Shown piece by piece: positions 2,049-57,197 of a DNA stretch of 64,000 nt. Each line of letters begins with the position of its first letter. Position 1 is the stretch's first letter. A program made the translations under genes and the position numbers. The notes beneath the pieces were generated by a model. It made no database searches and was not told the origin of the DNA. It saw only the letters and a list, made by a program, of their open reading frames with translations. The stretch is from IMG/VR virus record IMGVR_UViG_3300028864_000014, positions 171,319-235,318 of that record, one strand, 5' to 3'.

Positions 2049-2281
2049 TAACATCAAATAAATTAGACGATATTGCATATAAATTATATATGAATAGAAT
2101 TGATTTTGATTGCGTATATAATTCAATGAGTAAAAATGAATTTAAAAATATTCTTTATGATAAAAAATTTGACATTGATTATTATAACAGAGAAAGAACT
2201 GTTATAAAAAGTTTTTATTATAAAGCTAATATTATTTTAAGAAAAGAAAAACTTATAGAAATATCAAAAAATATAAAATGA
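2045..2281 (+). CDS. RKxKL-tagged micro-ORF (LDxIAYxLY subfamily)
   Basis: LDDIAYKLY; ends LRKEKLIEI; tandem paralog of previous. Confidence 0.75.
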   Translation: MITSNKLDDIAYKLYMNRIDFDCVYNSMSKNEFKNILYDKKFDIDYYNRERTVIKSFYYKANIILRKEKLIEISKNIK

Positions 2282-2526
2282 TATATCTTGATGATGTTAT
2301 ACATTATGTCAAACATAATAAAGTTCGTTTAGATATTGTATCTGATTATAAACATATTTATGATTATGATTTTCACATAGAAGAAAATACTGAAGTTTCA
2401 GTGTATTTACATTTAAATAAAAAACAATACGGCGGTGAAGTTTGTTATATTAAAATTATTAAAATTAAATTATCAGATATAATATCTCAAATAAGAAAAG
2501 AAAAACTCAAAAAAATAAAATCATGA
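2278..2526 (+). CDS. RKxKL-tagged micro-ORF
   Basis: ends IRKEKLKKI. Confidence 0.75.
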   Translation: MIYLDDVIHYVKHNKVRLDIVSDYKHIYDYDFHIEENTEVSVYLHLNKKQYGGEVCYIKIIKIKLSDIISQIRKEKLKKIKS

Positions 2527-2717
2527 CAATCTTTAAAGGAATAAAAATAAAAATATCAGAAACCACAAGTTATCCAACTCCTTATGGATATGAGTATAAC
2601 GCAAAGGGTTGTTATGTAAATAAAAAATTCTTAATTGTTGTTGGACATTTAGAACAAGACAACACAATAAGAATTAAATATCCAATGAAAGATATTATAA
2701 ATATAGAAATTATATAG
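2523..2717 (+). CDS. hypothetical protein
   Basis: 64 aa, ATGA overlap with previous. Confidence 0.7.
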   Translation: MTIFKGIKIKISETTSYPTPYGYEYNAKGCYVNKKFLIVVGHLEQDNTIRIKYPMKDIINIEII

Positions 2718-2722
2718 TAATC

Positions 2723-2872
2723 ATGAAAACAAATAAGCAAAACACAGAAACCGTAAATGGTTTATCATTTAGACATGCTGCACAAATTGTCAGACGTAAA
2801 ATGATGACTAAGACTTATACCGAAAAAAATGAATACAACAGGAAAGATAAATCTTGGAAAAATTTACTTTAA
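2723..2872 (+). CDS. small basic protein (49 aa)
   Basis: Hand-read: MKTNKQ...VRRKMMTKTYTEKNEYNRKDKSWKNLL*. Confidence 0.65.
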   Translation: MKTNKQNTETVNGLSFRHAAQIVRRKMMTKTYTEKNEYNRKDKSWKNLL

Positions 2873-2930
2873 TAAATTGTAAAAAAAGTTAAATAGCTGA
2901 TTTATTTATATATAAATCAGCTATTTTTAT

Positions 2931-2938
2931 TACCTTTG
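2931..2938 (+). promoter_or_regulatory. -7 element of Bacteroidota-type promoter
   Basis: TACCTTTG directly after an AATAGCTGATTT/AAATCAGCTATT hairpin. Confidence 0.6.
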
Positions 2939-2965
2939 CACTTGATAATTAAACATTCAAATATT

Positions 2966-3697
2966 ATGGAAGATAACAAAATTTACTGTCCTGTTTGTGG
3001 TTCTGAGTTAAAAGTTACTCATCGTGATAATTATGAAGATATTCAAGATCATGTATCATGTGATGGCGGAACTCCATCTCTAAAAGATGGTTATCAATGT
3101 GTAAATAAAAAATGTTTAGCATCTGAATATGGTTTGACTTGGATTCAAGATGGTGATTTATATACTAACAGAGATTTTTTTCCACCTGATGTTACTTATT
3201 CAATGGTTAATTCAAGAATAAAAGAATTGTGCGAAAATGGTAATACATTTGCAAAAAATTCATGGAATTACTATTACAAAAAAGGCTGTGATGCTGTAAA
3301 AAAGAGAACTATTATAATTAATATTTTTAAATATAAAATTGATATTATTCCAAAAAGATATGGATATAAATATCCAAATAATAAACGTGAAATGCCAAGA
3401 TTAATTGGTTGGAAATTTGAATTTTGGAAGAAAACTGGAGATTATAGCTATAGTTGTATTGTTCCAATACACACAATGGTAAAGCACGATATCAGTACTT
3501 TTAAAAATGCAATAAAAAGATTAAAGAAAAGTGAAAACCCACTTAATATGAAATCTGATATTGATGAAGTTATAAATAAAATTAAAGGTAATAATCATTG
3601 GGGACAACCAGATGAAAGAAATTATGCTAAGATATCATCGTTTATTATAAACATTTTTTATAAGAAAGAAATTAATTTTATTTTAAATTTAAAATAA
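2966..3697 (+). CDS. hypothetical protein with N-terminal CxxC
   Basis: YCPVCGS...CVNKKC; start moved from TTG 2936 (inside promoter) to ATG 2966. Confidence 0.75.
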   Translation: MEDNKIYCPVCGSELKVTHRDNYEDIQDHVSCDGGTPSLKDGYQCVNKKCLASEYGLTWIQDGDLYTNRDFFPPDVTYSMVNSRIKELCENGNTFAKNSWNYYYKKGCDAVKKRTIIINIFKYKIDIIPKRYGYKYPNNKREMPRLIGWKFEFWKKTGDYSYSCIVPIHTMVKHDISTFKNAIKRLKKSENPLNMKSDIDEVINKIKGNNHWGQPDERNYAKISSFIINIFYKKEINFILNLK

Positions 3698-11839: not shown

Positions 11840-12028
11840 ATGATAAAAGTTAAAGCAACTCAAGACGAAAACGGACATTGGTATGTGTTACCAAATGAAG
11901 TAGTAGAAGATTTTGATAAAGATGGACAGAATGAAGATTTTGTAGATTCTGGTAAATTTGACAATAAATACAACAAATATAGAACTGGCGGAGATTTAAA
12001 TAACATACAATTATATGCTAACATCTAA
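11840..12028 (+). CDS. hypothetical phage protein
   Basis: 62 aa ORF. Confidence 0.7.
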   Translation: MIKVKATQDENGHWYVLPNEVVEDFDKDGQNEDFVDSGKFDNKYNKYRTGGDLNNIQLYANI

Positions 12029-12086
12029 TTATGTTATTCTATACATAAAAATTATGATATATTTTAAAAATTAAAAATTAAAATAA

Positions 12087-12692
12087 ATGGGAAAAATAAA
12101 GTTAGTTAATAGTTATGAACCATCTAATTCAGATATGGTAATTGATGTTGAATATATCTTAGATAAAGGAAATTCTTTGATGGCAATTTTAAGTATTGTT
12201 TTTTCCGATGTTAGTAGAATTTGTGGTATGAAAGATAATAGTTATCAAATCAAATTTGAGTTTGAATCATATAAAGAATCAATATCAAAAGGAATATCAA
12301 TGGATTCAGATTATTTTGATAAGAAAAAATTAAGAACAATTGATTGTAATGACTTTCAGGATCCAGAATATTTGATGAGTATTAATTTAAAAAATGTATC
12401 TTGCTCTATTAATGCAGTAAAAACATTAAGCTCGATTTTAAATAGATATAAGCAAATTTCAAATAAGGATGAATTTAAAATTGTTCTAATTGCATCAGAT
12501 TTTGAAATAAATACATATATTGATATTTATGAATTGTGTAATAAATATCTACGTCTTATAGATGGAATAGATATTGTTATTGTTGGCAATGAAAAAATAT
12601 TTTCAATCGCTCTTGATTCATATTTAACATATAAAAATGGTTTCAAAAATGACGGATTAGGTTCTAGTTTAGTATCTAAATTGATTAGATAA
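12087..12692 (+). CDS. hypothetical alpha/beta protein
   Basis: 201 aa; hydrophobic strands KIVLIASD, IDIVIVGN; no complete catalytic motif. Confidence 0.75.
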   Translation: MGKIKLVNSYEPSNSDMVIDVEYILDKGNSLMAILSIVFSDVSRICGMKDNSYQIKFEFESYKESISKGISMDSDYFDKKKLRTIDCNDFQDPEYLMSINLKNVSCSINAVKTLSSILNRYKQISNKDEFKIVLIASDFEINTYIDIYELCNKYLRLIDGIDIVIVGNEKIFSIALDSYLTYKNGFKNDGLGSSLVSKLIR

Positions 12693-12711
12693 ATTTTTTC
12701 AATATAAAAAT

Positions 12712-13003
12712 AAATGGTTAGTGAAACTACAGTAAAGATTGTAATTATTAGATTAATTTTTGATGTTATGATTTGTAGATATAATCAGTGAATGGAGAGT
12801 CCATTGTGGCAAGTAAAGTTGGGGGGATGATATTAATACATAAGAAAGGATGTATTTTTAAACAAGCCCGCTACTGACAGCGGTGGAGGCATGGGTGAAA
12901 ATCCAGAACCAACCTAAAACGAGGCGTTGAATATCTAGTTTATTGAGCAGTTGCAAATGTTTAAGAAAACAAAATTTAGCTACGCCTATCCTTCATACCA
13001 TTT
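12712..13003 (+). ncRNA. candidate large structured ncRNA (about 290 nt)
   Basis: GC-rich ORF-free block; ends pair (AAATGGT..TGAA / TTCA.ACCATTT) then T-run; at least five internal helices. Confidence 0.6.
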
Positions 13004-13039
13004 GTTTTTTATTTTTTTTAACTTATAATTTAAAAAGTC

Positions 13040-13384
13040 ATGGACAAAAAAACTTTATTATTATTCTCATTTTGTATTCTTCCAGGATTAGGAATGTTGT
13101 GGACACTAATTGATCCTCAATTTAGTAATGTTCAATCTACTGAATGGTTCACAACAGTTACAGCACGTATTATATTTACTATTTTTTGTATTGCAGTTTC
13201 AATAATATCAATAGTATTAATATTACTCAAAAAATATAGCACAGTTGATTCACTTCAAGATAGTAGAGATAAAGTTGAGATTGATAAAATAACAAGTTTT
13301 ATTGACAACTACTTATCAGAATCACATACGTTATCAGATAAAGAATCTATTAATGAATGGGTAACAAAGAACTTCAAAAAATAA
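13040..13384 (+). CDS. two-TM membrane protein
   Basis: two hydrophobic segments in N-half. Confidence 0.75.
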   Translation: MDKKTLLLFSFCILPGLGMLWTLIDPQFSNVQSTEWFTTVTARIIFTIFCIAVSIISIVLILLKKYSTVDSLQDSRDKVEIDKITSFIDNYLSESHTLSDKESINEWVTKNFKK

Positions 13385-14748: not shown

Positions 14749-15660
14749 ATGAATATTCAAAGTTTAAGTATTGTAGTACCAACGAATAACAAGTGTGTAA
14801 ATCATTGTCAATTTTGTGTGAGTAGAACTCACACCAATCCGTATGTTGATAAGATAAATTATGTTGTCAATGAGTACATTGAAGGAAGTGACATCATTGA
14901 AAATTCAATTGAATATAAAGATTATTTCAATCGTTTACAGTTTGCCAGAGACAATGGATGTAATGTTGTAGTTCTTACTGGAACAGGTGAGCCAGTTCAA
15001 AATAGAGATTTCTTAGACTTTTTTTCAGAGATGAATTCTAAACTTCATACTCCTTTTAAAAGTATAGAAGTTCAAACAACTGGTGTTCTATTGACAGATG
15101 AATATCTTGGACATTTGAGAGAAATTGGAATTACAACTATTTCCTTTTCAATCTCTAATATTTTTGATAATGATAAAAATTTGAAAATTATAGGTTGTAA
15201 TGAAAAATTAAAATTTGATGTTTTTGATACTATTAAATTAGTTAAAAATCATGACTTCAATTTGAGATTATCATTAAATATGGTTAATGATTATGATGAA
15301 CACACAGTAGATGAGGTTCTATTGAGATGTAAAGAACTTGGTGCAGATCAAATAACTTTCAGAAAATTGTACAAATCTGAATTAAATAATGGTATTGATA
15401 AATGGATAGAAAATAATGCAAGTAAGATTTTTTATGATAGATTGATTTCATATATGAATGTATATGAAAATCGTAACGCTAATAAATTTTTAGGCACTCT
15501 TCCTTTTGGTCCTAAAATTTATGATGTTAATGATATGTCTGTTTCTATTGATTCTGATTGTATGAATTTAATGAAAAAAGATACATACAAATATCTCATT
15601 TTAAGAGAGAATGCAAAACTGTATTTTCTTTGGAATACACCATCCAGTTTGATATTTTGA
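14749..15660 (+). CDS. radical SAM superfamily protein
   Basis: CVNHCQFC (CxxxCxxC), LTGTGEP, VQTTG, TISFSIS. Confidence 0.9.
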   Translation: MNIQSLSIVVPTNNKCVNHCQFCVSRTHTNPYVDKINYVVNEYIEGSDIIENSIEYKDYFNRLQFARDNGCNVVVLTGTGEPVQNRDFLDFFSEMNSKLHTPFKSIEVQTTGVLLTDEYLGHLREIGITTISFSISNIFDNDKNLKIIGCNEKLKFDVFDTIKLVKNHDFNLRLSLNMVNDYDEHTVDEVLLRCKELGADQITFRKLYKSELNNGIDKWIENNASKIFYDRLISYMNVYENRNANKFLGTLPFGPKIYDVNDMSVSIDSDCMNLMKKDTYKYLILRENAKLYFLWNTPSSLIF

Positions 15661-24173: not shown

Positions 24174-26069
<1,896 letters not shown>

Positions 26070-45492: not shown

Positions 45493-46266
<774 letters not shown>

Positions 46267-46267
<1 letters not shown>

Positions 46268-46677
46268 TGACAAAAGAAGAATTAAGTGATTTTATATTGG
46301 AGACATTAAAAAAATGCTATAAAGTTAAACATGAGGATTATCCAAGTATAATTTTTTGGATATATGATGAACAATTCATTAGAAAAATTAAATTAGGCAA
46401 AATAAATAATCAAGACATAAAAATTACAAATGAAATTAACGGAACTTGTATATTTCAACAAGATTTTAAAAAATTAAAATTTCGTTGTAATGATGATATT
46501 TGGACTTTTTTATTCAGATACTATTCCGATGATTACTATGATAATCAGAAATTCATGAAAGATATACTAAAAAATATTACTAATTTAAATATGTATTTAC
46601 CAACAATGAATTCATCAACAGCTAATATATCATTGAAAAATTACAAGAAAATAAGTTTATATTTAAATGATGTATAA
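46267..46677 (+). CDS. Family X paralog, array 3/13
   Basis: same motif set. Confidence 0.85.
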
Positions 46678-47065
46678 AAAAGATTTATATGATTGGTTCT
46701 GGAATAAATATAATTCCTGCTATCAAGTTAAAGTAGAATTATATCCAGATAGTGTATTCTTAGTTTATGACGAAAAATATATAAGAAAACTTAAATTGTT
46801 TAAATTAAATAATACAGAAGAGTTAATTTCAATTAATAATGTTGAAGGAACATTTTTATTTAATCAGGATAATAAATTTAGAATTTTATGGCTGAGTGAA
46901 GAATTGTGGAAGTTCTTTGAAAAAAACTATTCATATGACTACTATGATATTCAAAAACTAATAAAAAAACTACTAAAAGATCATCCAATTTTATTCGATT
47001 ATAATCCTTTACCTGGTATGATTAAAAATATATATGAAAATAGTATTATAAAATCAAGATTATAA
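46667..47065 (+). CDS. Family X paralog, array 4/13
   Basis: same motif set. Confidence 0.85.
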   Translation: MMYKKDLYDWFWNKYNSCYQVKVELYPDSVFLVYDEKYIRKLKLFKLNNTEELISINNVEGTFLFNQDNKFRILWLSEELWKFFEKNYSYDYYDIQKLIKKLLKDHPILFDYNPLPGMIKNIYENSIIKSRL

Positions 47066-47985
<920 letters not shown>

Positions 47986-47989
47986 TAAT

Positions 47990-50626
<2,637 letters not shown>

Positions 50627-50634
<8 letters not shown>

Positions 50635-51091
50635 AGAAGAATTATCAAATTGGTTGATTAGCAAAATTTTATATTGCTATCCAGTAGTAGATAAAGAATG
50701 GAATGATTACGTTTTTTATTTCTATGACGAACAATATATTAGAAAACTTAAATTGTTTAAGTTATATAATATAAAAATAACATCGCCAAATCAAGTTAAT
50801 GGAATATGCTTATTTAGTTTAAATATTAAATATAAAATTATTTACTTTCATTATGAATATGTTTGGAAATTCTTTGAAAATAATTATATAAATAATTATA
50901 TACAAATTGAAAAATTTATAACTGAAATTATAAATGATTATAAACAACTAAATAAGTATTCACCAAAAAAAAATTCACAAGGATTTAGATATCCTGAACT
51001 AATAAGAAGTAAGAAAAATTTAGAAATTAGAGAAGCTGATTGGTCATCTCTACTTCCAAGTTCATATAAAAAATTAATAGTATTGAAATAA
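50627..51091 (+). CDS. Family X paralog, array 13/13
   Basis: same motif set. Confidence 0.85.
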
Positions 51092-51124: not shown

Positions 51125-52870
51125 TTATGCATTTGCATTAACAATAGTATTTCTATCGTATGCTAACTTTTGAATCACAGATGAATCAACATATAAATCT
51201 TTTGTGTAACTATTATAAATATATGTAGATGCTGTAAAATCTGATAAATGATAATTGTTAATACCAACATCATAATTACCAATATTGAAATTATCACAAA
51301 CATTATTCATCTTAAAATTGCTACCAATTACATTACGATTAAACGCGTTACCAATAGTATTATAGCTAAAAACATTTCCAATGTTATTGATGTCAAATCC
51401 ATTTCCAATAGTATTAAATTGAAAATAATTCCCAATAATATTACCATTAAAATATCCACCAAAAGAATTTCCTGTATTATTATTTTGAAAATTAGAACCA
51501 ATCCTATTATTTTGCGAGCCATTTCCAATAGTATTACATAGAGCAGCATATCCAATACTATTATAACTAAAATATGATTCAATAGTATTACGAGAAAACG
51601 CTTCACCAATATAATTATGAATAAAATATTCTCCAATACTATTATAAAAAAACACATCTGAAATAGTATTATATTGAAACATGCTTCTTATTGTATTATT
51701 ATAAAAACTAGCTCCAATACTATTATTCATAATATTACTTTCAATTGTATTAAATGTAAAATTAACTCCGATACTATTGTGTTCAAAATTTCCTCCTATT
51801 GTATTATTAAAAAAACTAGCTCCAATACTATTATAACTAAAATATGATTCAATTGTATTGCAGTTAATATTATTTCCAAAAAATACAGTATTATTACAAT
51901 TAAGTATATCTCCATCTCCAATGTAATCTTGTTTTATTCTATTAGAATAAATTGTACTATCATATGTATTAAACATCAGATAATCAGTATATAAAGTGGA
52001 TGTTGGAATACTAAAATAAAGATACCAATTTGTTATATTTGGACTAGAATAACTTAAATTAGCCCATTCAAAACGTTTCCAAATAATTTGATTTGTTTGT
52101 GTTGATGGATTCACACCAATTACATTATCAATTAAACATATATAAATTTGTGTTGTCCCACTGATTAAAACAACATCACTTCTCATATATGTTGATCCTG
52201 AATTCCAAATGTTTGTAACATTCAATTGCCATCTTCTAAATTTTACTTGTCTGAAGTCAAATGGAATATCATTATTTTTTAATGTATCAACTCTTCTATA
52301 AATATATCCTTTTGCACATCCAGGCATCATACTTTGATTATTATTGAAATCATAATATATTATATCATTCGGATATAATCTTGAATACGTCTCAGGCTTT
52401 AATGTATTAACACTACTTGCAGTTACTAATAAAGGTTCTGTTGTTCCTGAATTTATAATAGTTGTTTCAGGTATTCTATGTATAGTTTGATAATCAGTAA
52501 TTAAATATGCTTGATTAGTAGTTAATCCACTATTATTAATTAATGTTACTAATCCACTATATGTGACATTTGTAACTGAATTTGTACCTCCACTAGAACT
52601 TATACTAATACCTGATGTTCCTGATGTACCATTTTGTCCAGAACTTCCATATCCAACTGAACCATTCTGTCCTGAAGTTCCTGACGTTCCTGAATTACCG
52701 GAACTTCCTGTGTTTCCAGTTGATCCATTCTGTCCAGATGTTCCAGATTTACCTGCTGTTCCACTAGTCCCATTTTGACCTGATGTACCAGAGGTGCCTG
52801 TTGATCCACCTGTTGTTCCAGATAATCTTCCTTCAACCCATTCTTCACTCGCTAACTGTATATTTACCAT
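51125..52870 (-). CDS. Family F beta-solenoid fibre/adhesin (F4)
   Basis: MVNIQLASEEWV, GTSG linker, core domain, NxIG repeats, conserved C-terminus. Confidence 0.8.
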   Translation of the reverse strand: MVNIQLASEEWVEGRLSGTTGGSTGTSGTSGQNGTSGTAGKSGTSGQNGSTGNTGSSGNSGTSGTSGQNGSVGYGSSGQNGTSGTSGISISSSGGTNSVTNVTYSGLVTLINNSGLTTNQAYLITDYQTIHRIPETTIINSGTTEPLLVTASSVNTLKPETYSRLYPNDIIYYDFNNNQSMMPGCAKGYIYRRVDTLKNNDIPFDFRQVKFRRWQLNVTNIWNSGSTYMRSDVVLISGTTQIYICLIDNVIGVNPSTQTNQIIWKRFEWANLSYSSPNITNWYLYFSIPTSTLYTDYLMFNTYDSTIYSNRIKQDYIGDGDILNCNNTVFFGNNINCNTIESYFSYNSIGASFFNNTIGGNFEHNSIGVNFTFNTIESNIMNNSIGASFYNNTIRSMFQYNTISDVFFYNSIGEYFIHNYIGEAFSRNTIESYFSYNSIGYAALCNTIGNGSQNNRIGSNFQNNNTGNSFGGYFNGNIIGNYFQFNTIGNGFDINNIGNVFSYNTIGNAFNRNVIGSNFKMNNVCDNFNIGNYDVGINNYHLSDFTASTYIYNSYTKDLYVDSSVIQKLAYDRNTIVNANA

Positions 52871-55406: not shown

Positions 55407-57197
55407 TTAAGCATTTGCACTCACAATAACAGTCTTATCATATATTAACTTTAACTGTGATGAAGAATTACTAAATATTTCTTTTGTATATGAATTATAA
55501 ACATAAGTAGATGATAAAAAATTTGTTCCAGTAACACCACATTGAATAAAATTGTGAGCAAAATTACTTCCTATTGTATTACCACTAAATGTCTCTATTA
55601 TTGAATTATTTGTAAAATAATTTCCTACTGTATTAATACCAAAATAATTTGATATTGAATTATGTCCAAAATCAGTTCCTATTATATTAGTACCAAATCC
55701 ACTTTTTATTGTATTATACATAAAATTAGTTCCTATTGTATTAGCACCAAAATTACTTCCTATTGAATTATATCCAAAATTAGTTCCTATTTTATTATTA
55801 CCAAAATTTCCTCCTATTACATTCAAAGAAGAATTGTTTCCTATCGTGTTAGTACCAAAATTTCCTCCTACCACATTTAAAGTGAAAGCGTTTCCTATTA
55901 TATTATATCCAAAATTGATATCTATAATATTATTAGTGAGTCCATATCCTATAAAATTAAATTGACAATTACGTTCAATTGAATTATAAGTAAAACTATC
56001 ACCTATTACATTAAAATTAAAACTATTTCCTATTGTATTATCAGAAAAACTTCCTCCTATTGAATTAATAGCGAAACTGTTTCCTAATTTATTTTTATTA
56101 AATGCATATGAAATAGAATTATTATAAAAACTATCTCCTATTGTATTAGTATTAAAACTATTTCCTATTGTGTTCTCATAAAAATTGTTTCCTATAGTAT
56201 TATTATAAAAACCAGATCCAAGTGTGACTGAATTATTGTTTGATATTATATTTGTTGATGACTGTTCAATTGAAATATTGAAACTCGATGAATAATCCCA
56301 AAACATATTATAATCTGTATATCCAGTCGAACATGGAATATTAACACTGAACAAAGCCCAACTATTTTTATATGGACTTGTGTAACTTAAATTACCCCAT
56401 TCAAATAATTTCCAAATTGAATCAATGGATGGATCAATTCCAGTCACAAGATTATTCATACAAATATAAATCTTAGTTGTTCCACCACTTAAAACAACAT
56501 CATTCTTATTGTATGTCGTACTATTATTCCAAATGTTAGTAACATTCAATTGAAATCTTCTGAACTTTACCTTTCTAAAATCAAAAGGTATGTCATTAAC
56601 CTGAATTGTGTCTATCCTTCTATAAATATATCCTTTAGTACAACCAGATACCATACTTTGATTATTAGTATAATTATAATAAATAATATCCTGAGGATAT
56701 AATGCTGAATATGCTTCTGGTTTTAATGAATTAATACCACTTGCTGTAACTAATAAAGGTTCTGTTGTTCCTGAACTTAACTCAGTTGTTTTAGGAATTA
56801 CATATACTGTCTGATAATCTGTTATTAAATATTGATTACCTATTGTTAATCCATTTGAAGATATTAAATTAGATAAACTATTATATGTCAAATTTGTAAC
56901 TGTACTTGTACTTCCACTAGGAGAATTACCAGATGTTCCAGATGTTCCTGAACCTGATGTACCAGAAGTTCCTGAATTTCCAGCAGATCCATTCTGTCCT
57001 GAAGTTCCTGACGTTCCTGAATTACCAGAACTTCCTGTGTTTCCAGTTGATCCATTCTGTCCAGATGTGCCTGATCTACCTGCTGTTCCACTAGTTCCAT
57101 TTTGACCTGATGTACCAGACGTACCTGTTGATCCACCTGTTGTTCCAGATAACCTTCCTTCAACCCATTCTTCACTCACCAATTGAATATTTATCAT
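55407..57197 (-). CDS. Family F beta-solenoid fibre/adhesin (F3)
   Basis: MINIQLVSEEWV; first ~190 bp nearly identical to F4. Confidence 0.8.
   Translation of the reverse strand: MINIQLVSEEWVEGRLSGTTGGSTGTSGTSGQNGTSGTAGRSGTSGQNGSTGNTGSSGNSGTSGTSGQNGSAGNSGTSGTSGSGTSGTSGNSPSGSTSTVTNLTYNSLSNLISSNGLTIGNQYLITDYQTVYVIPKTTELSSGTTEPLLVTASGINSLKPEAYSALYPQDIIYYNYTNNQSMVSGCTKGYIYRRIDTIQVNDIPFDFRKVKFRRFQLNVTNIWNNSTTYNKNDVVLSGGTTKIYICMNNLVTGIDPSIDSIWKLFEWGNLSYTSPYKNSWALFSVNIPCSTGYTDYNMFWDYSSSFNISIEQSSTNIISNNNSVTLGSGFYNNTIGNNFYENTIGNSFNTNTIGDSFYNNSISYAFNKNKLGNSFAINSIGGSFSDNTIGNSFNFNVIGDSFTYNSIERNCQFNFIGYGLTNNIIDINFGYNIIGNAFTLNVVGGNFGTNTIGNNSSLNVIGGNFGNNKIGTNFGYNSIGSNFGANTIGTNFMYNTIKSGFGTNIIGTDFGHNSISNYFGINTVGNYFTNNSIIETFSGNTIGSNFAHNFIQCGVTGTNFLSSTYVYNSYTKEIFSNSSSQLKLIYDKTVIVSANA

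What the first reader, a model, noticed from the sequence alone, without database searches (positions are those of the whole stretch)
12712..13003. About 290-nt multi-helix ncRNA candidate with RNase P-like submotifs but no canonical P4
Seen: GC-rich island with paired ends and a T-run. Helices: AATGG/CCATT (12791-805), AATACAT/ATGTATT, CCGCT/AGCGG (12868-83), GTTGG/CCAAC (12818/12909), AGGCGT/ACGCCT (12922/12982). In order it contains GGAGAGTCC, GGGTGAAA, GAGCAG and AACAAAA..GCTA, echoing RNase P conserved regions I, III, IV and V. I could not form the P4 pseudoknot. Inference: a divergent phage RNase P RNA or a new large RNA class.
Basis: partly seen in the sequence, partly recalled or inferred. 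Interest (0 to 1): 0.7.

Follow-up and report, generated by a model that had tools for sequence, protein, structure and literature searches.

The report
New structured RNA in giant phage
The GC-rich gap at 12704-13011 encodes a conserved, roughly 300-nt folded non-coding RNA of a family absent from Rfam. It is not RNase P, its one distant relative sits inside another phage's tRNA gene array, and its function is unknown.

Summary
The 347-nt gap between two ORFs is a 40-42% GC island in a 24% GC huge-phage genome from peat. It has base-paired ends and a T-run.

It is not RNase P. No Rfam family matches, no P4 can form, and two of the four "RNase P-like" strings are not conserved in relatives.

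It is nevertheless a genuine conserved structured RNA on the + strand.
- Three variants about 88% identical exist in related peat phages.
- One distant homolog (110 bits, E about 1e-29 with a covariance model) lies in a 43-46% GC phage contig. There it exactly fills the spacer between tRNA-Pro and tRNA-Leu in an array of about 30 tRNAs.
- Helices covary: 13 pairs changed on both sides, against 4.5 in shuffles and 0-2 in slid controls.
- Single-stranded junctions are nearly invariant, including a 23-nt identical block.
They are replaced by long-range helices P3 and P4.

Close relatives in both lineages lack the RNA, so it is accessory.

Best reading: a stand-alone, trans-acting stable RNA of a new family. 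By context it resembles ROOL, GOLLD and T4 rnaC/rnaD. Function is unknown, and no transcript data could be found.

The parts
12704..12718 (+). P1, 5' strand of the closing helix. It pairs with 12997-13011.
   Evidence: RNAalifold and MFE. In L063 a wholly different sequence pairs at the same place: AAGUCAGUUGAUU with AAUCAACUGAUUU.
12719..12726 (+). J1/2, containing the conserved GUGAAAC. This is a first GUGAA copy that could pair with 12992-12996 in place of P3.
   Evidence: Invariant in the window, L030, L038, L036 remnant and L063. The L030 MFE uses this alternative pairing.
12727..12778 (+). P2, a long AU-rich hairpin of variable length.
   Evidence: A-U to G-C and A-U to U-A swaps plus many wobble changes keep it paired. 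It is shortened in run X18 and reduced to CUU-GAAA-AAG in L063.
12779..12787 (+). J2/3, the invariant AUAUAAUCA.
   Evidence: Identical in all lineages including L063.
12788..12796 (+). P3 5' strand (GUGAA.GGA). It pairs with 12989-12996 and closes the four-way junction.
   Evidence: U-A to C-G swap in L063 and G-U to G-C in L030.
12800..12807 (+). P4 5' strand.
   Evidence: Three pairs changed on both sides: UCCAUUGU/GCGGUGGA against CCUACA/UGUAGG in L063.
12808..12820 (+). Conserved strand GGCAAGUAAAGUU. It includes P5 (12812-12814 with 12873-12875) and the 5' side of a possible pseudoknot (12818-12822 with 12909-12913).
   Evidence: Invariant in all lineages. The pseudoknot pairs are kept in 4/4 lineages, with G-C, G-U and A-U at one position.
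12821..12872 (+). P6 (12821-12826 with 12867-12872), carrying the extension hairpin P6a (12831-12860).
   Evidence: Four of six P6 pairs changed on both sides. P6a has a C-G to U-A swap in L038 and is replaced by a 7-nt loop in L063.
12888..12910 (+). P7 hairpin with the loop GGUGAAA(A)UCC (UGAAA, T-loop-like). The outer pair 12888-12910 covaries.
   Evidence: G-C, G-C, A-U, A-U at 12888-12910. The loop sequence is conserved.
12911..12921 (+). J7/8, AACCUAAAACG. It is the core of a 23-nt block identical between L030/L038 and L063.
   Evidence: This motif retrieved L063 from the metagenome contigs.
12922..12987 (+). P8 (AGGCGU/ACGCCU, invariant) enclosing P9 (12944-12949 with 12958-12963). P9 carries the invariant 8-nt loop GUUGCAAA (12950-12957).
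   Evidence: P9 has three pairs changed on both sides. The loop is identical in all lineages.
12989..13011 (+). 3' strands of P3 and P1.
13005..13020 (+). U-run overlapping and following the 3' strand of P1. It is a possible transcript end. L063 has UUUU at the same place.
   Evidence: Sequence. The terminator scan did not call it, because the 'loop' is the whole RNA.

Best explanation
Positions 12704-13011 on the + strand are a gene for a roughly 300-nt structured non-coding RNA of a family that is not in Rfam.

The fold is as follows.
- A long terminal helix, P1, brings the two ends together.
- A variable-length hairpin, P2, branches off.
- Helix P3 closes a four-way junction. From that junction emerge a P4-P5-P6 arm, a hairpin P7 with a UGAAA (T-loop-like) loop, and a P8-P9 arm ending in an invariant GUUGCAAA loop.
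- A 5-bp pseudoknot (12818-12822 with 12909-12913) may tie the two most conserved single strands together.

Shown: the fold is conserved and covaries. It is specific to the + strand, because it has many G-U pairs. The unpaired junction strands are under strong purifying selection. The RNA exists in two unrelated phage lineages. In one of them it is a unit of a tRNA array.

Inferred: it works in trans as a stable RNA, not as a leader of a particular mRNA. In the array homolog its ends would be made by the tRNA-processing enzymes that cut the flanking tRNAs. In the window, the P1 stem plus the U-run would end the transcript. Its job is most likely to bind a partner through the invariant junction and loop nucleotides. 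The partner could be a protein, a tRNA-type RNA or copies of itself. The RNA would serve as an accessory factor that some tRNA-rich phages carry and close relatives have lost.

It is not an RNase P RNA.

On confidence: about 0.9 that it is a conserved structured RNA of an uncatalogued family, and about 0.55 for the whole statement including trans action.
For: - GC island and intergenic position.
- Strand asymmetry of folding: z -2.1 against -0.85 in the window, and -2.83 against -1.18 in L063.
- Variants in L030, L038/L039/L054/L062 and in runs X17 and X18 keep the helices through compensatory and wobble changes.
- Covariance model R1 finds L063/L072/L074 at 110 bits, E about 1e-29.
- 95.4% of cells are paired. 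Thirteen pairs changed on both sides, against 4.5 +/- 1.5 in shuffles (0/500) and 0-2 when the partners are slid.
- P1 pairs with unrelated sequences in the two lineages.
- In L063 the RNA lies at 2202-2433, between tRNA-Pro (ends 2201) and tRNA-Leu (starts 2434), on the tRNA strand.
- The small ORF that starts at GUG 12806 varies between 23, 31, 9 and 0 codons, so the stretch is not coding (my own reading of the aligned sequences; no tool was run on these ORFs).
- The RNA is single copy in the 235-kb record.
Against: - No transcript evidence exists. No RNA run was listed.
- Only four distinct sequences in two deep lineages are available, and the alignment used for the pair counts was fitted to the model.
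- In the window the RNA is not near the phage's own tRNA arrays. It is 46 kb from the nearer one.
- P1 followed by a U-run just upstream of the next gene, or the next tRNA, would also suit a cis-acting attenuator.
- Presence or absence between close relatives (L036, L077) shows the RNA is dispensable, and this would also fit a selfish element.
- No partner has been identified.
Confidence: 0.55

Rival explanations
1. Divergent phage RNase P RNA that matures the phage's tRNA precursors.
For: Both carrier phages are rich in tRNAs, and one copy lies in a tRNA array. Strings resembling CR-I (GGAGAGUC) and a T-loop-like GGUGAAA are conserved.
Against: No RNase P model of Rfam matches, either at E<=10 on the window or at E<=1 on the homolog. 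No P4 pseudoknot is possible, because GGAGAG pairs locally within P3. The CR-IV-like and CR-V-like strings are not conserved. The order of helices is that of a four-way junction, not the P1-P2-P3-P4 core. Close relatives with the same tRNAs lack the RNA.
Confidence: 0.02
2. Cis-acting riboswitch or attenuator. A ligand or factor stabilises P1/P3, and with the U-run this stops transcription before the next gene (P0002/P0003 in the window, tRNA-Leu in L063). The duplicated GUGAA strands would provide the alternative pairing.
For: In both lineages P1 is directly followed by a U-run and then the next gene on the same strand. Two conserved GUGAA copies compete for one UUCAY strand. The junctions are invariant, as in ligand-binding aptamers. 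Two mutually exclusive pairings of 12910 both fit the variation.
Against: The downstream genes are unrelated in the two lineages, and one of them is a tRNA. In L030 the first downstream gene is deleted but the RNA is kept. No separate expression platform is present. No riboswitch model matches.
Confidence: 0.15
3. Selfish or mobile non-coding insert (MITE-like, or an element carrying a ribozyme) bounded by inverted ends.
For: The ends are inverted repeats. In L072 against L077 the insert is exactly the spacer content bounded by P1. The distribution is patchy, with presence in two unrelated phages.
Against: The end sequences differ completely between lineages, which does not fit transposase recognition. 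Pairing relies on G-U pairs of one strand only. The element is single copy per genome. There is no target duplication. The peat clade pattern is explained by vertical descent with one deletion (L036 remnant).
Confidence: 0.08
4. A Y-RNA-like partner of a phage Ro60 (Rsr) protein.
For: L072 and L077 encode a 542-aa TROVE/vWA_Ro60 protein in the same tRNA-rich region. Y RNAs also have paired termini.
Against: The gene is 5.4 kb away, and tRNA-like pieces that better fit a YrlA-type RNA lie right behind it. L077 has Ro60 but no RNA. The 235-kb record of the window has no TROVE match. The terminal helix is not conserved in sequence. There is no YrlA match on the RNA.
Confidence: 0.05

Closest known systems
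ROOL and GOLLD RNAs (Rfam; cryo-EM in PMC12286853)
   Same: Both are structured RNAs of unknown function encoded by phages and prophages, often near tRNA islands, and both lack a known protein partner (PMC12286853). The present RNA is phage-borne, lies in a tRNA array in one lineage, and is accessory. It also has an invariant loop with a self-complementary UUGCAA, which could support self-association. That last point is inference only.
   Different: There is no sequence or structure match. The present RNA is much smaller, at 230-310 nt against roughly 580 nt for ROOL (figure from memory) and more than 800 nt for many GOLLD RNAs (PMC12286853). It has a different architecture. Oligomerisation was not tested.
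Phage T4 rnaC and rnaD (species 1 and 2 stable RNAs)
   Same: These are small stable RNAs of unknown function encoded as units of a phage tRNA cluster, on the tRNA strand, directly beside a tRNA (T4 record annotation).
   Different: They are 139 and 119 nt long. Model R1 shows no similarity to them (best score under 10 bits). rnaC carries a tRNA-like T-arm sequence, and the present RNA does not.
Bacterial RNase P RNA (types A and B; archaeal type T)
   Same: Size range of the smallest forms, association with tRNA genes, a GGAGAGUC string resembling CR-I, and a UGAAA T-loop-like hairpin.
   Different: No covariance-model match, no P4, no conserved CR-IV/CR-V equivalents, and a different helix topology.
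Y RNAs (YrlA/YrlB) of Ro60/Rsr systems
   Same: Paired termini. One carrier phage has a Ro60-like gene in the same tRNA-rich region.
   Different: The RNA is not adjacent to that gene. It has no conserved Ro-binding stem and no tRNA-like module. It is absent from a Ro60-carrying relative, and no TROVE gene is present in the window's record.
Cobalamin and FMN riboswitches
   Same: They share the short GGUGAAA(A)UCC hairpin motif.
   Different: The order of motifs is reversed relative to cobalamin (from memory), no model matches, and one copy sits between tRNAs rather than in a 5' UTR.

Membership tests
RNase P RNA | Significant match to an RNase P covariance model (Rfam bacterial A/B, archaeal, type T) | tested here: not met
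   There were no matches at gathering score in the window. No RNase P hit appeared at E<=10 on 12600-13100 or at E<=1 on the homolog L063.
RNase P RNA | P4 long-range helix between the CR-I and CR-V strands | tested here: not met
   GGAGAG pairs with UCC as part of the nested helix P3. I found no complementarity between the CR-I-like and CR-V-like strings by inspection.
RNase P RNA | Conservation of CR-I to CR-V among homologs | tested here: not met
   GAGCAG becomes GGACAG (L030) and ACCUGG (L063). AACAAAAUUUAGCUA becomes GAAAGAAAGUGCCA in L063.
RNase P RNA | Cleaves pre-tRNA 5' leaders | not testable with these tools
   This needs an in vitro assay.
ROOL / GOLLD | Match to the Rfam model | tested here: not met
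ROOL / GOLLD | Phage or prophage origin near tRNA islands | tested here: met
   In L063/L072 the RNA lies between tRNA-Pro and tRNA-Leu. In the window it is phage-borne but 46 kb from the nearest tRNA array.
ROOL / GOLLD | Homo-oligomeric RNA-only assembly | not testable with these tools
   The complex predictor refuses RNA-only jobs.
T4 rnaC/rnaD | Sequence or structure homology | tested here: not met
   R1 with filters off on the T4 locus gave a best score of 8.2 bits, and that hit lies outside both genes.
Y RNA (YrlA type) | Adjacent rsr/TROVE gene | tested here: inconclusive
   A TROVE gene lies 5.4 kb upstream in L072. None is found in the 235-kb record of the window, which is about 33% complete. 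L077 has the gene but no RNA.
Y RNA (YrlA type) | Match to the YrlA model, or a tRNA-like module | tested here: not met
   YrlA hits in L063 fall on true tRNAs, not on 2202-2433. ARAGORN finds nothing there.
Group I intron | Interrupts a gene; match to the intron model | tested here: not met
   The RNA lies between complete ORFs or between tRNAs. There is no Intron_gpI hit.
MITE-like element | Conserved terminal inverted repeats, several copies, target duplication | tested here: not met
   The end sequences are unrelated between lineages. The element is single copy. No duplication is seen at the L072/L077 junction.

The most novel reading that the evidence does not exclude
This is a new class of catalytic or self-assembling phage RNA tied to tRNA biology. 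Examples would be a ribozyme or RNA-only assembly that acts on tRNAs or protects them from host anticodon nucleases. Its invariant junctions and pseudoknot would form the active or binding site, and the palindromic GUUGCAAA loop would mediate dimerisation.
Probability: 0.12. Interest if true: 0.85.

Novelty: new variant of a known kind. Interest (0 to 1): 0.55.

Why it matters
Phage tRNA islands have long been known to harbour stable RNAs whose roles remain unsolved, such as T4 species 1 and 2, ROOL and GOLLD. This is a further, much smaller family, unrelated to those in sequence, and it shares the same context in one lineage. It also occurs in huge phages estimated at about 700 kb.

Its small size makes it a tractable object for probing, structure determination and partner pull-down. 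So do its sharply conserved junctions, its likely pseudoknot and the natural presence/absence pairs of phages. These approaches could show what such RNAs do for tRNA-rich phages.

The case is also a worked example that short RNase P-like strings in an AT-rich genome do not indicate RNase P.

Tried and rejected
- Rfam at gathering score over the whole 235-kb record gave only tRNAs.
- Rfam at E<=10 on the region gave four chance hits only.
- ARAGORN found no tRNA or tmRNA in the window.
- BLASTN against 50,697 phage records, with the window RNA and with the L063 RNA, gave nothing relevant.
- Motif scans of the virus contigs returned only the phage itself, its close relatives, or chance hits. The chance hits included L013-L028 and L034. 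The scans used GGGTGAAAATCCNGAACC, ATTGTGGCAAGTAAAGTT, ACCAACCTAAAACGAGGCG and two gapped patterns.
- The genome-contig scan gave one chance hit, inside a coding region of a Chitinophagaceae MAG.
- RNA-seq runs: none was listed.
- Neighbouring proteins P0001-P0003 have no family. P0001 has only two homolog clusters.
- No R1 hit was found in the more distant relatives G001 (501 kb) and G002-G004, or in LR756501.1 (735 kb).
- No proteins are shared between the L072/L077 loci and the window's genome.
- The alternative genetic code idea was rejected. Table 11 already gives dense ORFs, with TAA the dominant stop.
- The other strong GC island of the genome (G000 151.4 kb) is a coding Gly/Gln-rich repeat, not an RNA.
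- Resemblances I considered by eye were not supported by position or by the homolog. These were the group I S element, the 11-nt tetraloop receptor, a CsrA-binding hairpin, and C/D boxes.

Full report
**Setting.** The window is bases 171319-235318 of a 235-kb IMG/VR virus record.
- The record has 24.4% GC and 16 tRNA genes in two arrays.
- CheckV estimates it as 33% complete, which implies a genome of roughly 700 kb.
- DNA runs that hold it are peat metagenomes.
- The only relative in GenBank phage records, found through a radical-SAM gene, is the 735-kb uncultured phage LR756501.1, at 37% amino-acid identity.
- Table 11 reads the genome well.

**The observation.** The finding lies in the 347-nt gap between ORF 12087-12692 (P0001, 201 aa, no family) and ORF 13040-13384 (P0002, 114 aa, membrane-like).
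- GC rises to 0.40-0.42 at 12775-12999, about three standard deviations above the genome mean.
- The + strand folds to -75.2 kcal/mol (z -2.1). The - strand has z -0.85.
- The ends pair (12704-12718 with 12997-13011), and a U-run follows.
- The island, the paired ends and the T-run are therefore all real.

**Known families.**
- cmscan against 4227 Rfam models found nothing in the window at gathering score.
- It found only four chance-level hits at E 5-9 in 12600-13100. None is RNase P, cobalamin, GOLLD or ROOL.
- ARAGORN found no tRNA or tmRNA.
- The rest of the genome yields only tRNAs.

**Close relatives.** A neighbouring radical-SAM gene and P0001 led to related peat phage contigs.
- Full-length variants, each about 88% identical to the window, exist in L030/L033. 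A second type is in L038/L039/L054/L062.
- Logan contigs of runs X17 and X18 show the L038 type and a further type with a shortened P2.
- The gene context varies. L038 lacks P0001, and an 11-nt direct repeat AAAATAAATGG at 12080-12090 and 12707-12717 marks the difference. L030 lacks P0002.
- L036/L037/L040 keep only a decayed 5' remnant. L029 has no island at all.
- The RNA is therefore independent of either neighbour, and it is dispensable.
- Between the window and L030 the RNA differs at 12.4% of positions. Third codon positions of P0001 differ at only 4.5%. The locus is thus a recombination mosaic, and raw identity says little about constraint.
- The pattern of changes does say something. 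RNAalifold on three sequences gave 93 pairs, with five credible double changes and many wobble-mediated ones.

**The distant homolog.** A metagenome scan with the invariant junction AACCTAAAACGAGGCGTT found L063. This is a 3.2-kb contig of 46% GC, identical in this region to the 40-kb ENA contig L072.
- A covariance model of the core (R1, window 12779-12999) scores it at 110 bits, E about 1e-29.
- The RNA occupies L063 2202-2433. That is exactly the space between tRNA-Pro(UGG), ending at 2201, and tRNA-Leu(UAG), starting at 2434.
- It lies on the tRNA strand, within an array of about 30 tRNAs.
- L072 has PHROG matches and HNH endonucleases, so it is probably a phage.
- Its relative L077 has the same two tRNAs 12 nt apart and no RNA.

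**The fold.** On the model-guided alignment A6 (five distinct sequences), 95.4% of cells are standard pairs.
- Thirteen pairs changed on both sides. Column shuffles give 4.5 +/- 1.5 (0 of 500 reach 13), and slid partners give 0-2.
- The caveat is that the alignment was fitted to the model.
- P1, which lies outside the model, pairs in both lineages with unrelated sequences.
- P3 shows U-A to C-G. P4 shows three double changes, P6 four and P9 three.
- Many pairs are G-U on the + strand, so the fold belongs to a + strand transcript. This agrees with the folding asymmetry in both lineages.
- Unpaired strands are nearly invariant: AUAUAAUCA, GGCAAGUAAAGUU, GGUGAAA(A)UCC, a 23-nt block around AACCUAAAACGAGGCGUU, and the loop GUUGCAAA.
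- P2 and P6a are variable insertions.

- AAUGG/CCAUU and CCGCU/AGCGG fail.
- AAUACAU/AUGUAUU holds within the peat clade.
- AGGCGU/ACGCCU is invariant.
- GUUGG/CCAAC is kept in all four lineages (G-C, G-U, A-U at 12821-12910), but it would be a pseudoknot competing with the outer pairs of P6 and P7.
- Position 12910 also covaries perfectly with 12888. Both pairings may matter, but that is inference.

**Not coding.** The small ORF that starts at GUG 12806 would be 23, 31 and 9 codons in the three peat variants, and it has no start codon in L063. This is my own reading of the aligned sequences; I did not run the ORF or translation tools on them.

**What it is not.**
- RNase P: there is no model match and no P4. 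GGAGAG pairs locally. GAGCAG and the CR-V-like stretch are not conserved. The topology is a four-way junction.
- Riboswitch for a given gene: the downstream genes differ, and in L063 the downstream gene is a tRNA.
- MITE: the ends differ between lineages, the element is single copy, and the pairing is strand-specific.
- Y RNA: a Ro60-like gene lies 5.4 kb upstream in L072 and L077. tRNA-like pieces directly behind that gene are better Y RNA candidates. L077 has the gene without the RNA. The window's record has no TROVE match.
- T4 rnaC/rnaD share the context but show no similarity.

**Best explanation.** This is a stand-alone, trans-acting, accessory structured RNA of a new family. By context it belongs with the phage RNAs of unknown function found near tRNA islands, such as ROOL and GOLLD (PMC12286853) and T4 rnaC/rnaD.
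- In the array homolog, its maturation by the enzymes that cut the flanking tRNAs is an inference from position.
- In the window, termination at P1 plus the U-run is also an inference.
- The invariant loop GUUGCAAA contains the self-complementary UUGCAA. It could alternatively pair with GCAA of the invariant GGCAAGU strand. Either contact is speculation, and it cannot be tested by covariation because both partners never vary.

**Limits.**
- There is no expression evidence.
- Only two deep lineages are known.
- The function is unknown.

Noticed in passing
L072 551-2700 and L077 438-2420: A 542-aa TROVE/vWA_Ro60 (Ro60/Rsr-like) protein in a tRNA-rich phage contig. It is followed within a few hundred bases by partial tRNA-like matches with a T-arm sequence (L072 about 2330-2400 and 2620-2687; L077 2350-2413). 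These are probably YrlA-type Y RNA modules.
   Followed up: partly
window 12080-12090 and 12707-12717: An 11-nt direct repeat, AAAATAAATGG, lies at the start of ORF P0001 and at the 5' end of the RNA. Relative L038 lacks exactly the stretch between the two copies. P0001 was therefore gained or lost by recombination between them.
   Followed up: partly
L036 5435-5500 (also L037, L040): A decayed remnant of the RNA: the 5' strand of P1, a mini P2, and a piece of the GGCAAGUA strand. It joins directly to sequence homologous to window 14172 onwards. This is a deletion of about 1.4 kb that removed the RNA core, P0002 and P0003.
   Followed up: partly
window 12000-13057 versus L030 4866-5920: The P0001 gene is 97% identical, with 4.5% divergence at third codon positions. 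The adjacent RNA differs at 12.4%, and the next gene is only 68% identical. A sharp recombination boundary therefore lies at the stop codon of P0001.
   Followed up: partly
window 45493-51091: A run of about 13 tightly packed same-strand ORFs of 114-168 aa, many overlapping by a few bases. It looks like a tandem array of small paralogous genes.
   Followed up: no
window 24174-26066, 51125-52870, 55407-57197; G000 151.4 kb (L011 12930-13100): Most other GC-rich islands of this AT-rich genome lie in large proteins with collagen-like or Gly/Gln/Pro repeats (probable fibres). They are coding repeats, not RNAs.
   Followed up: partly
G000 2118-3597 and 137519-137971 (outside the window): Sixteen tRNA genes in two arrays, among them five tRNA-Leu in a row. 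Several tRNAs for Thr, Gly, Pro and Arg are unusually long, at 84-94 nt, which suggests introns or long extra arms.
   Followed up: no
L063 2517-2712: A 196-nt gap in the tRNA array. It contains a T-arm-like GGGTTCGAATCCC, but no tRNA was called there by ARAGORN or Rfam. It may be a degenerate tRNA or another small RNA.
   Followed up: no
window 14749-15660: A radical-SAM protein, with MoaA/SPASM-type weak matches only. It is conserved across this phage clade at 65-85% identity. Its only GenBank phage relative is the 735-kb phage LR756501.1 (37% identity).
   Followed up: partly
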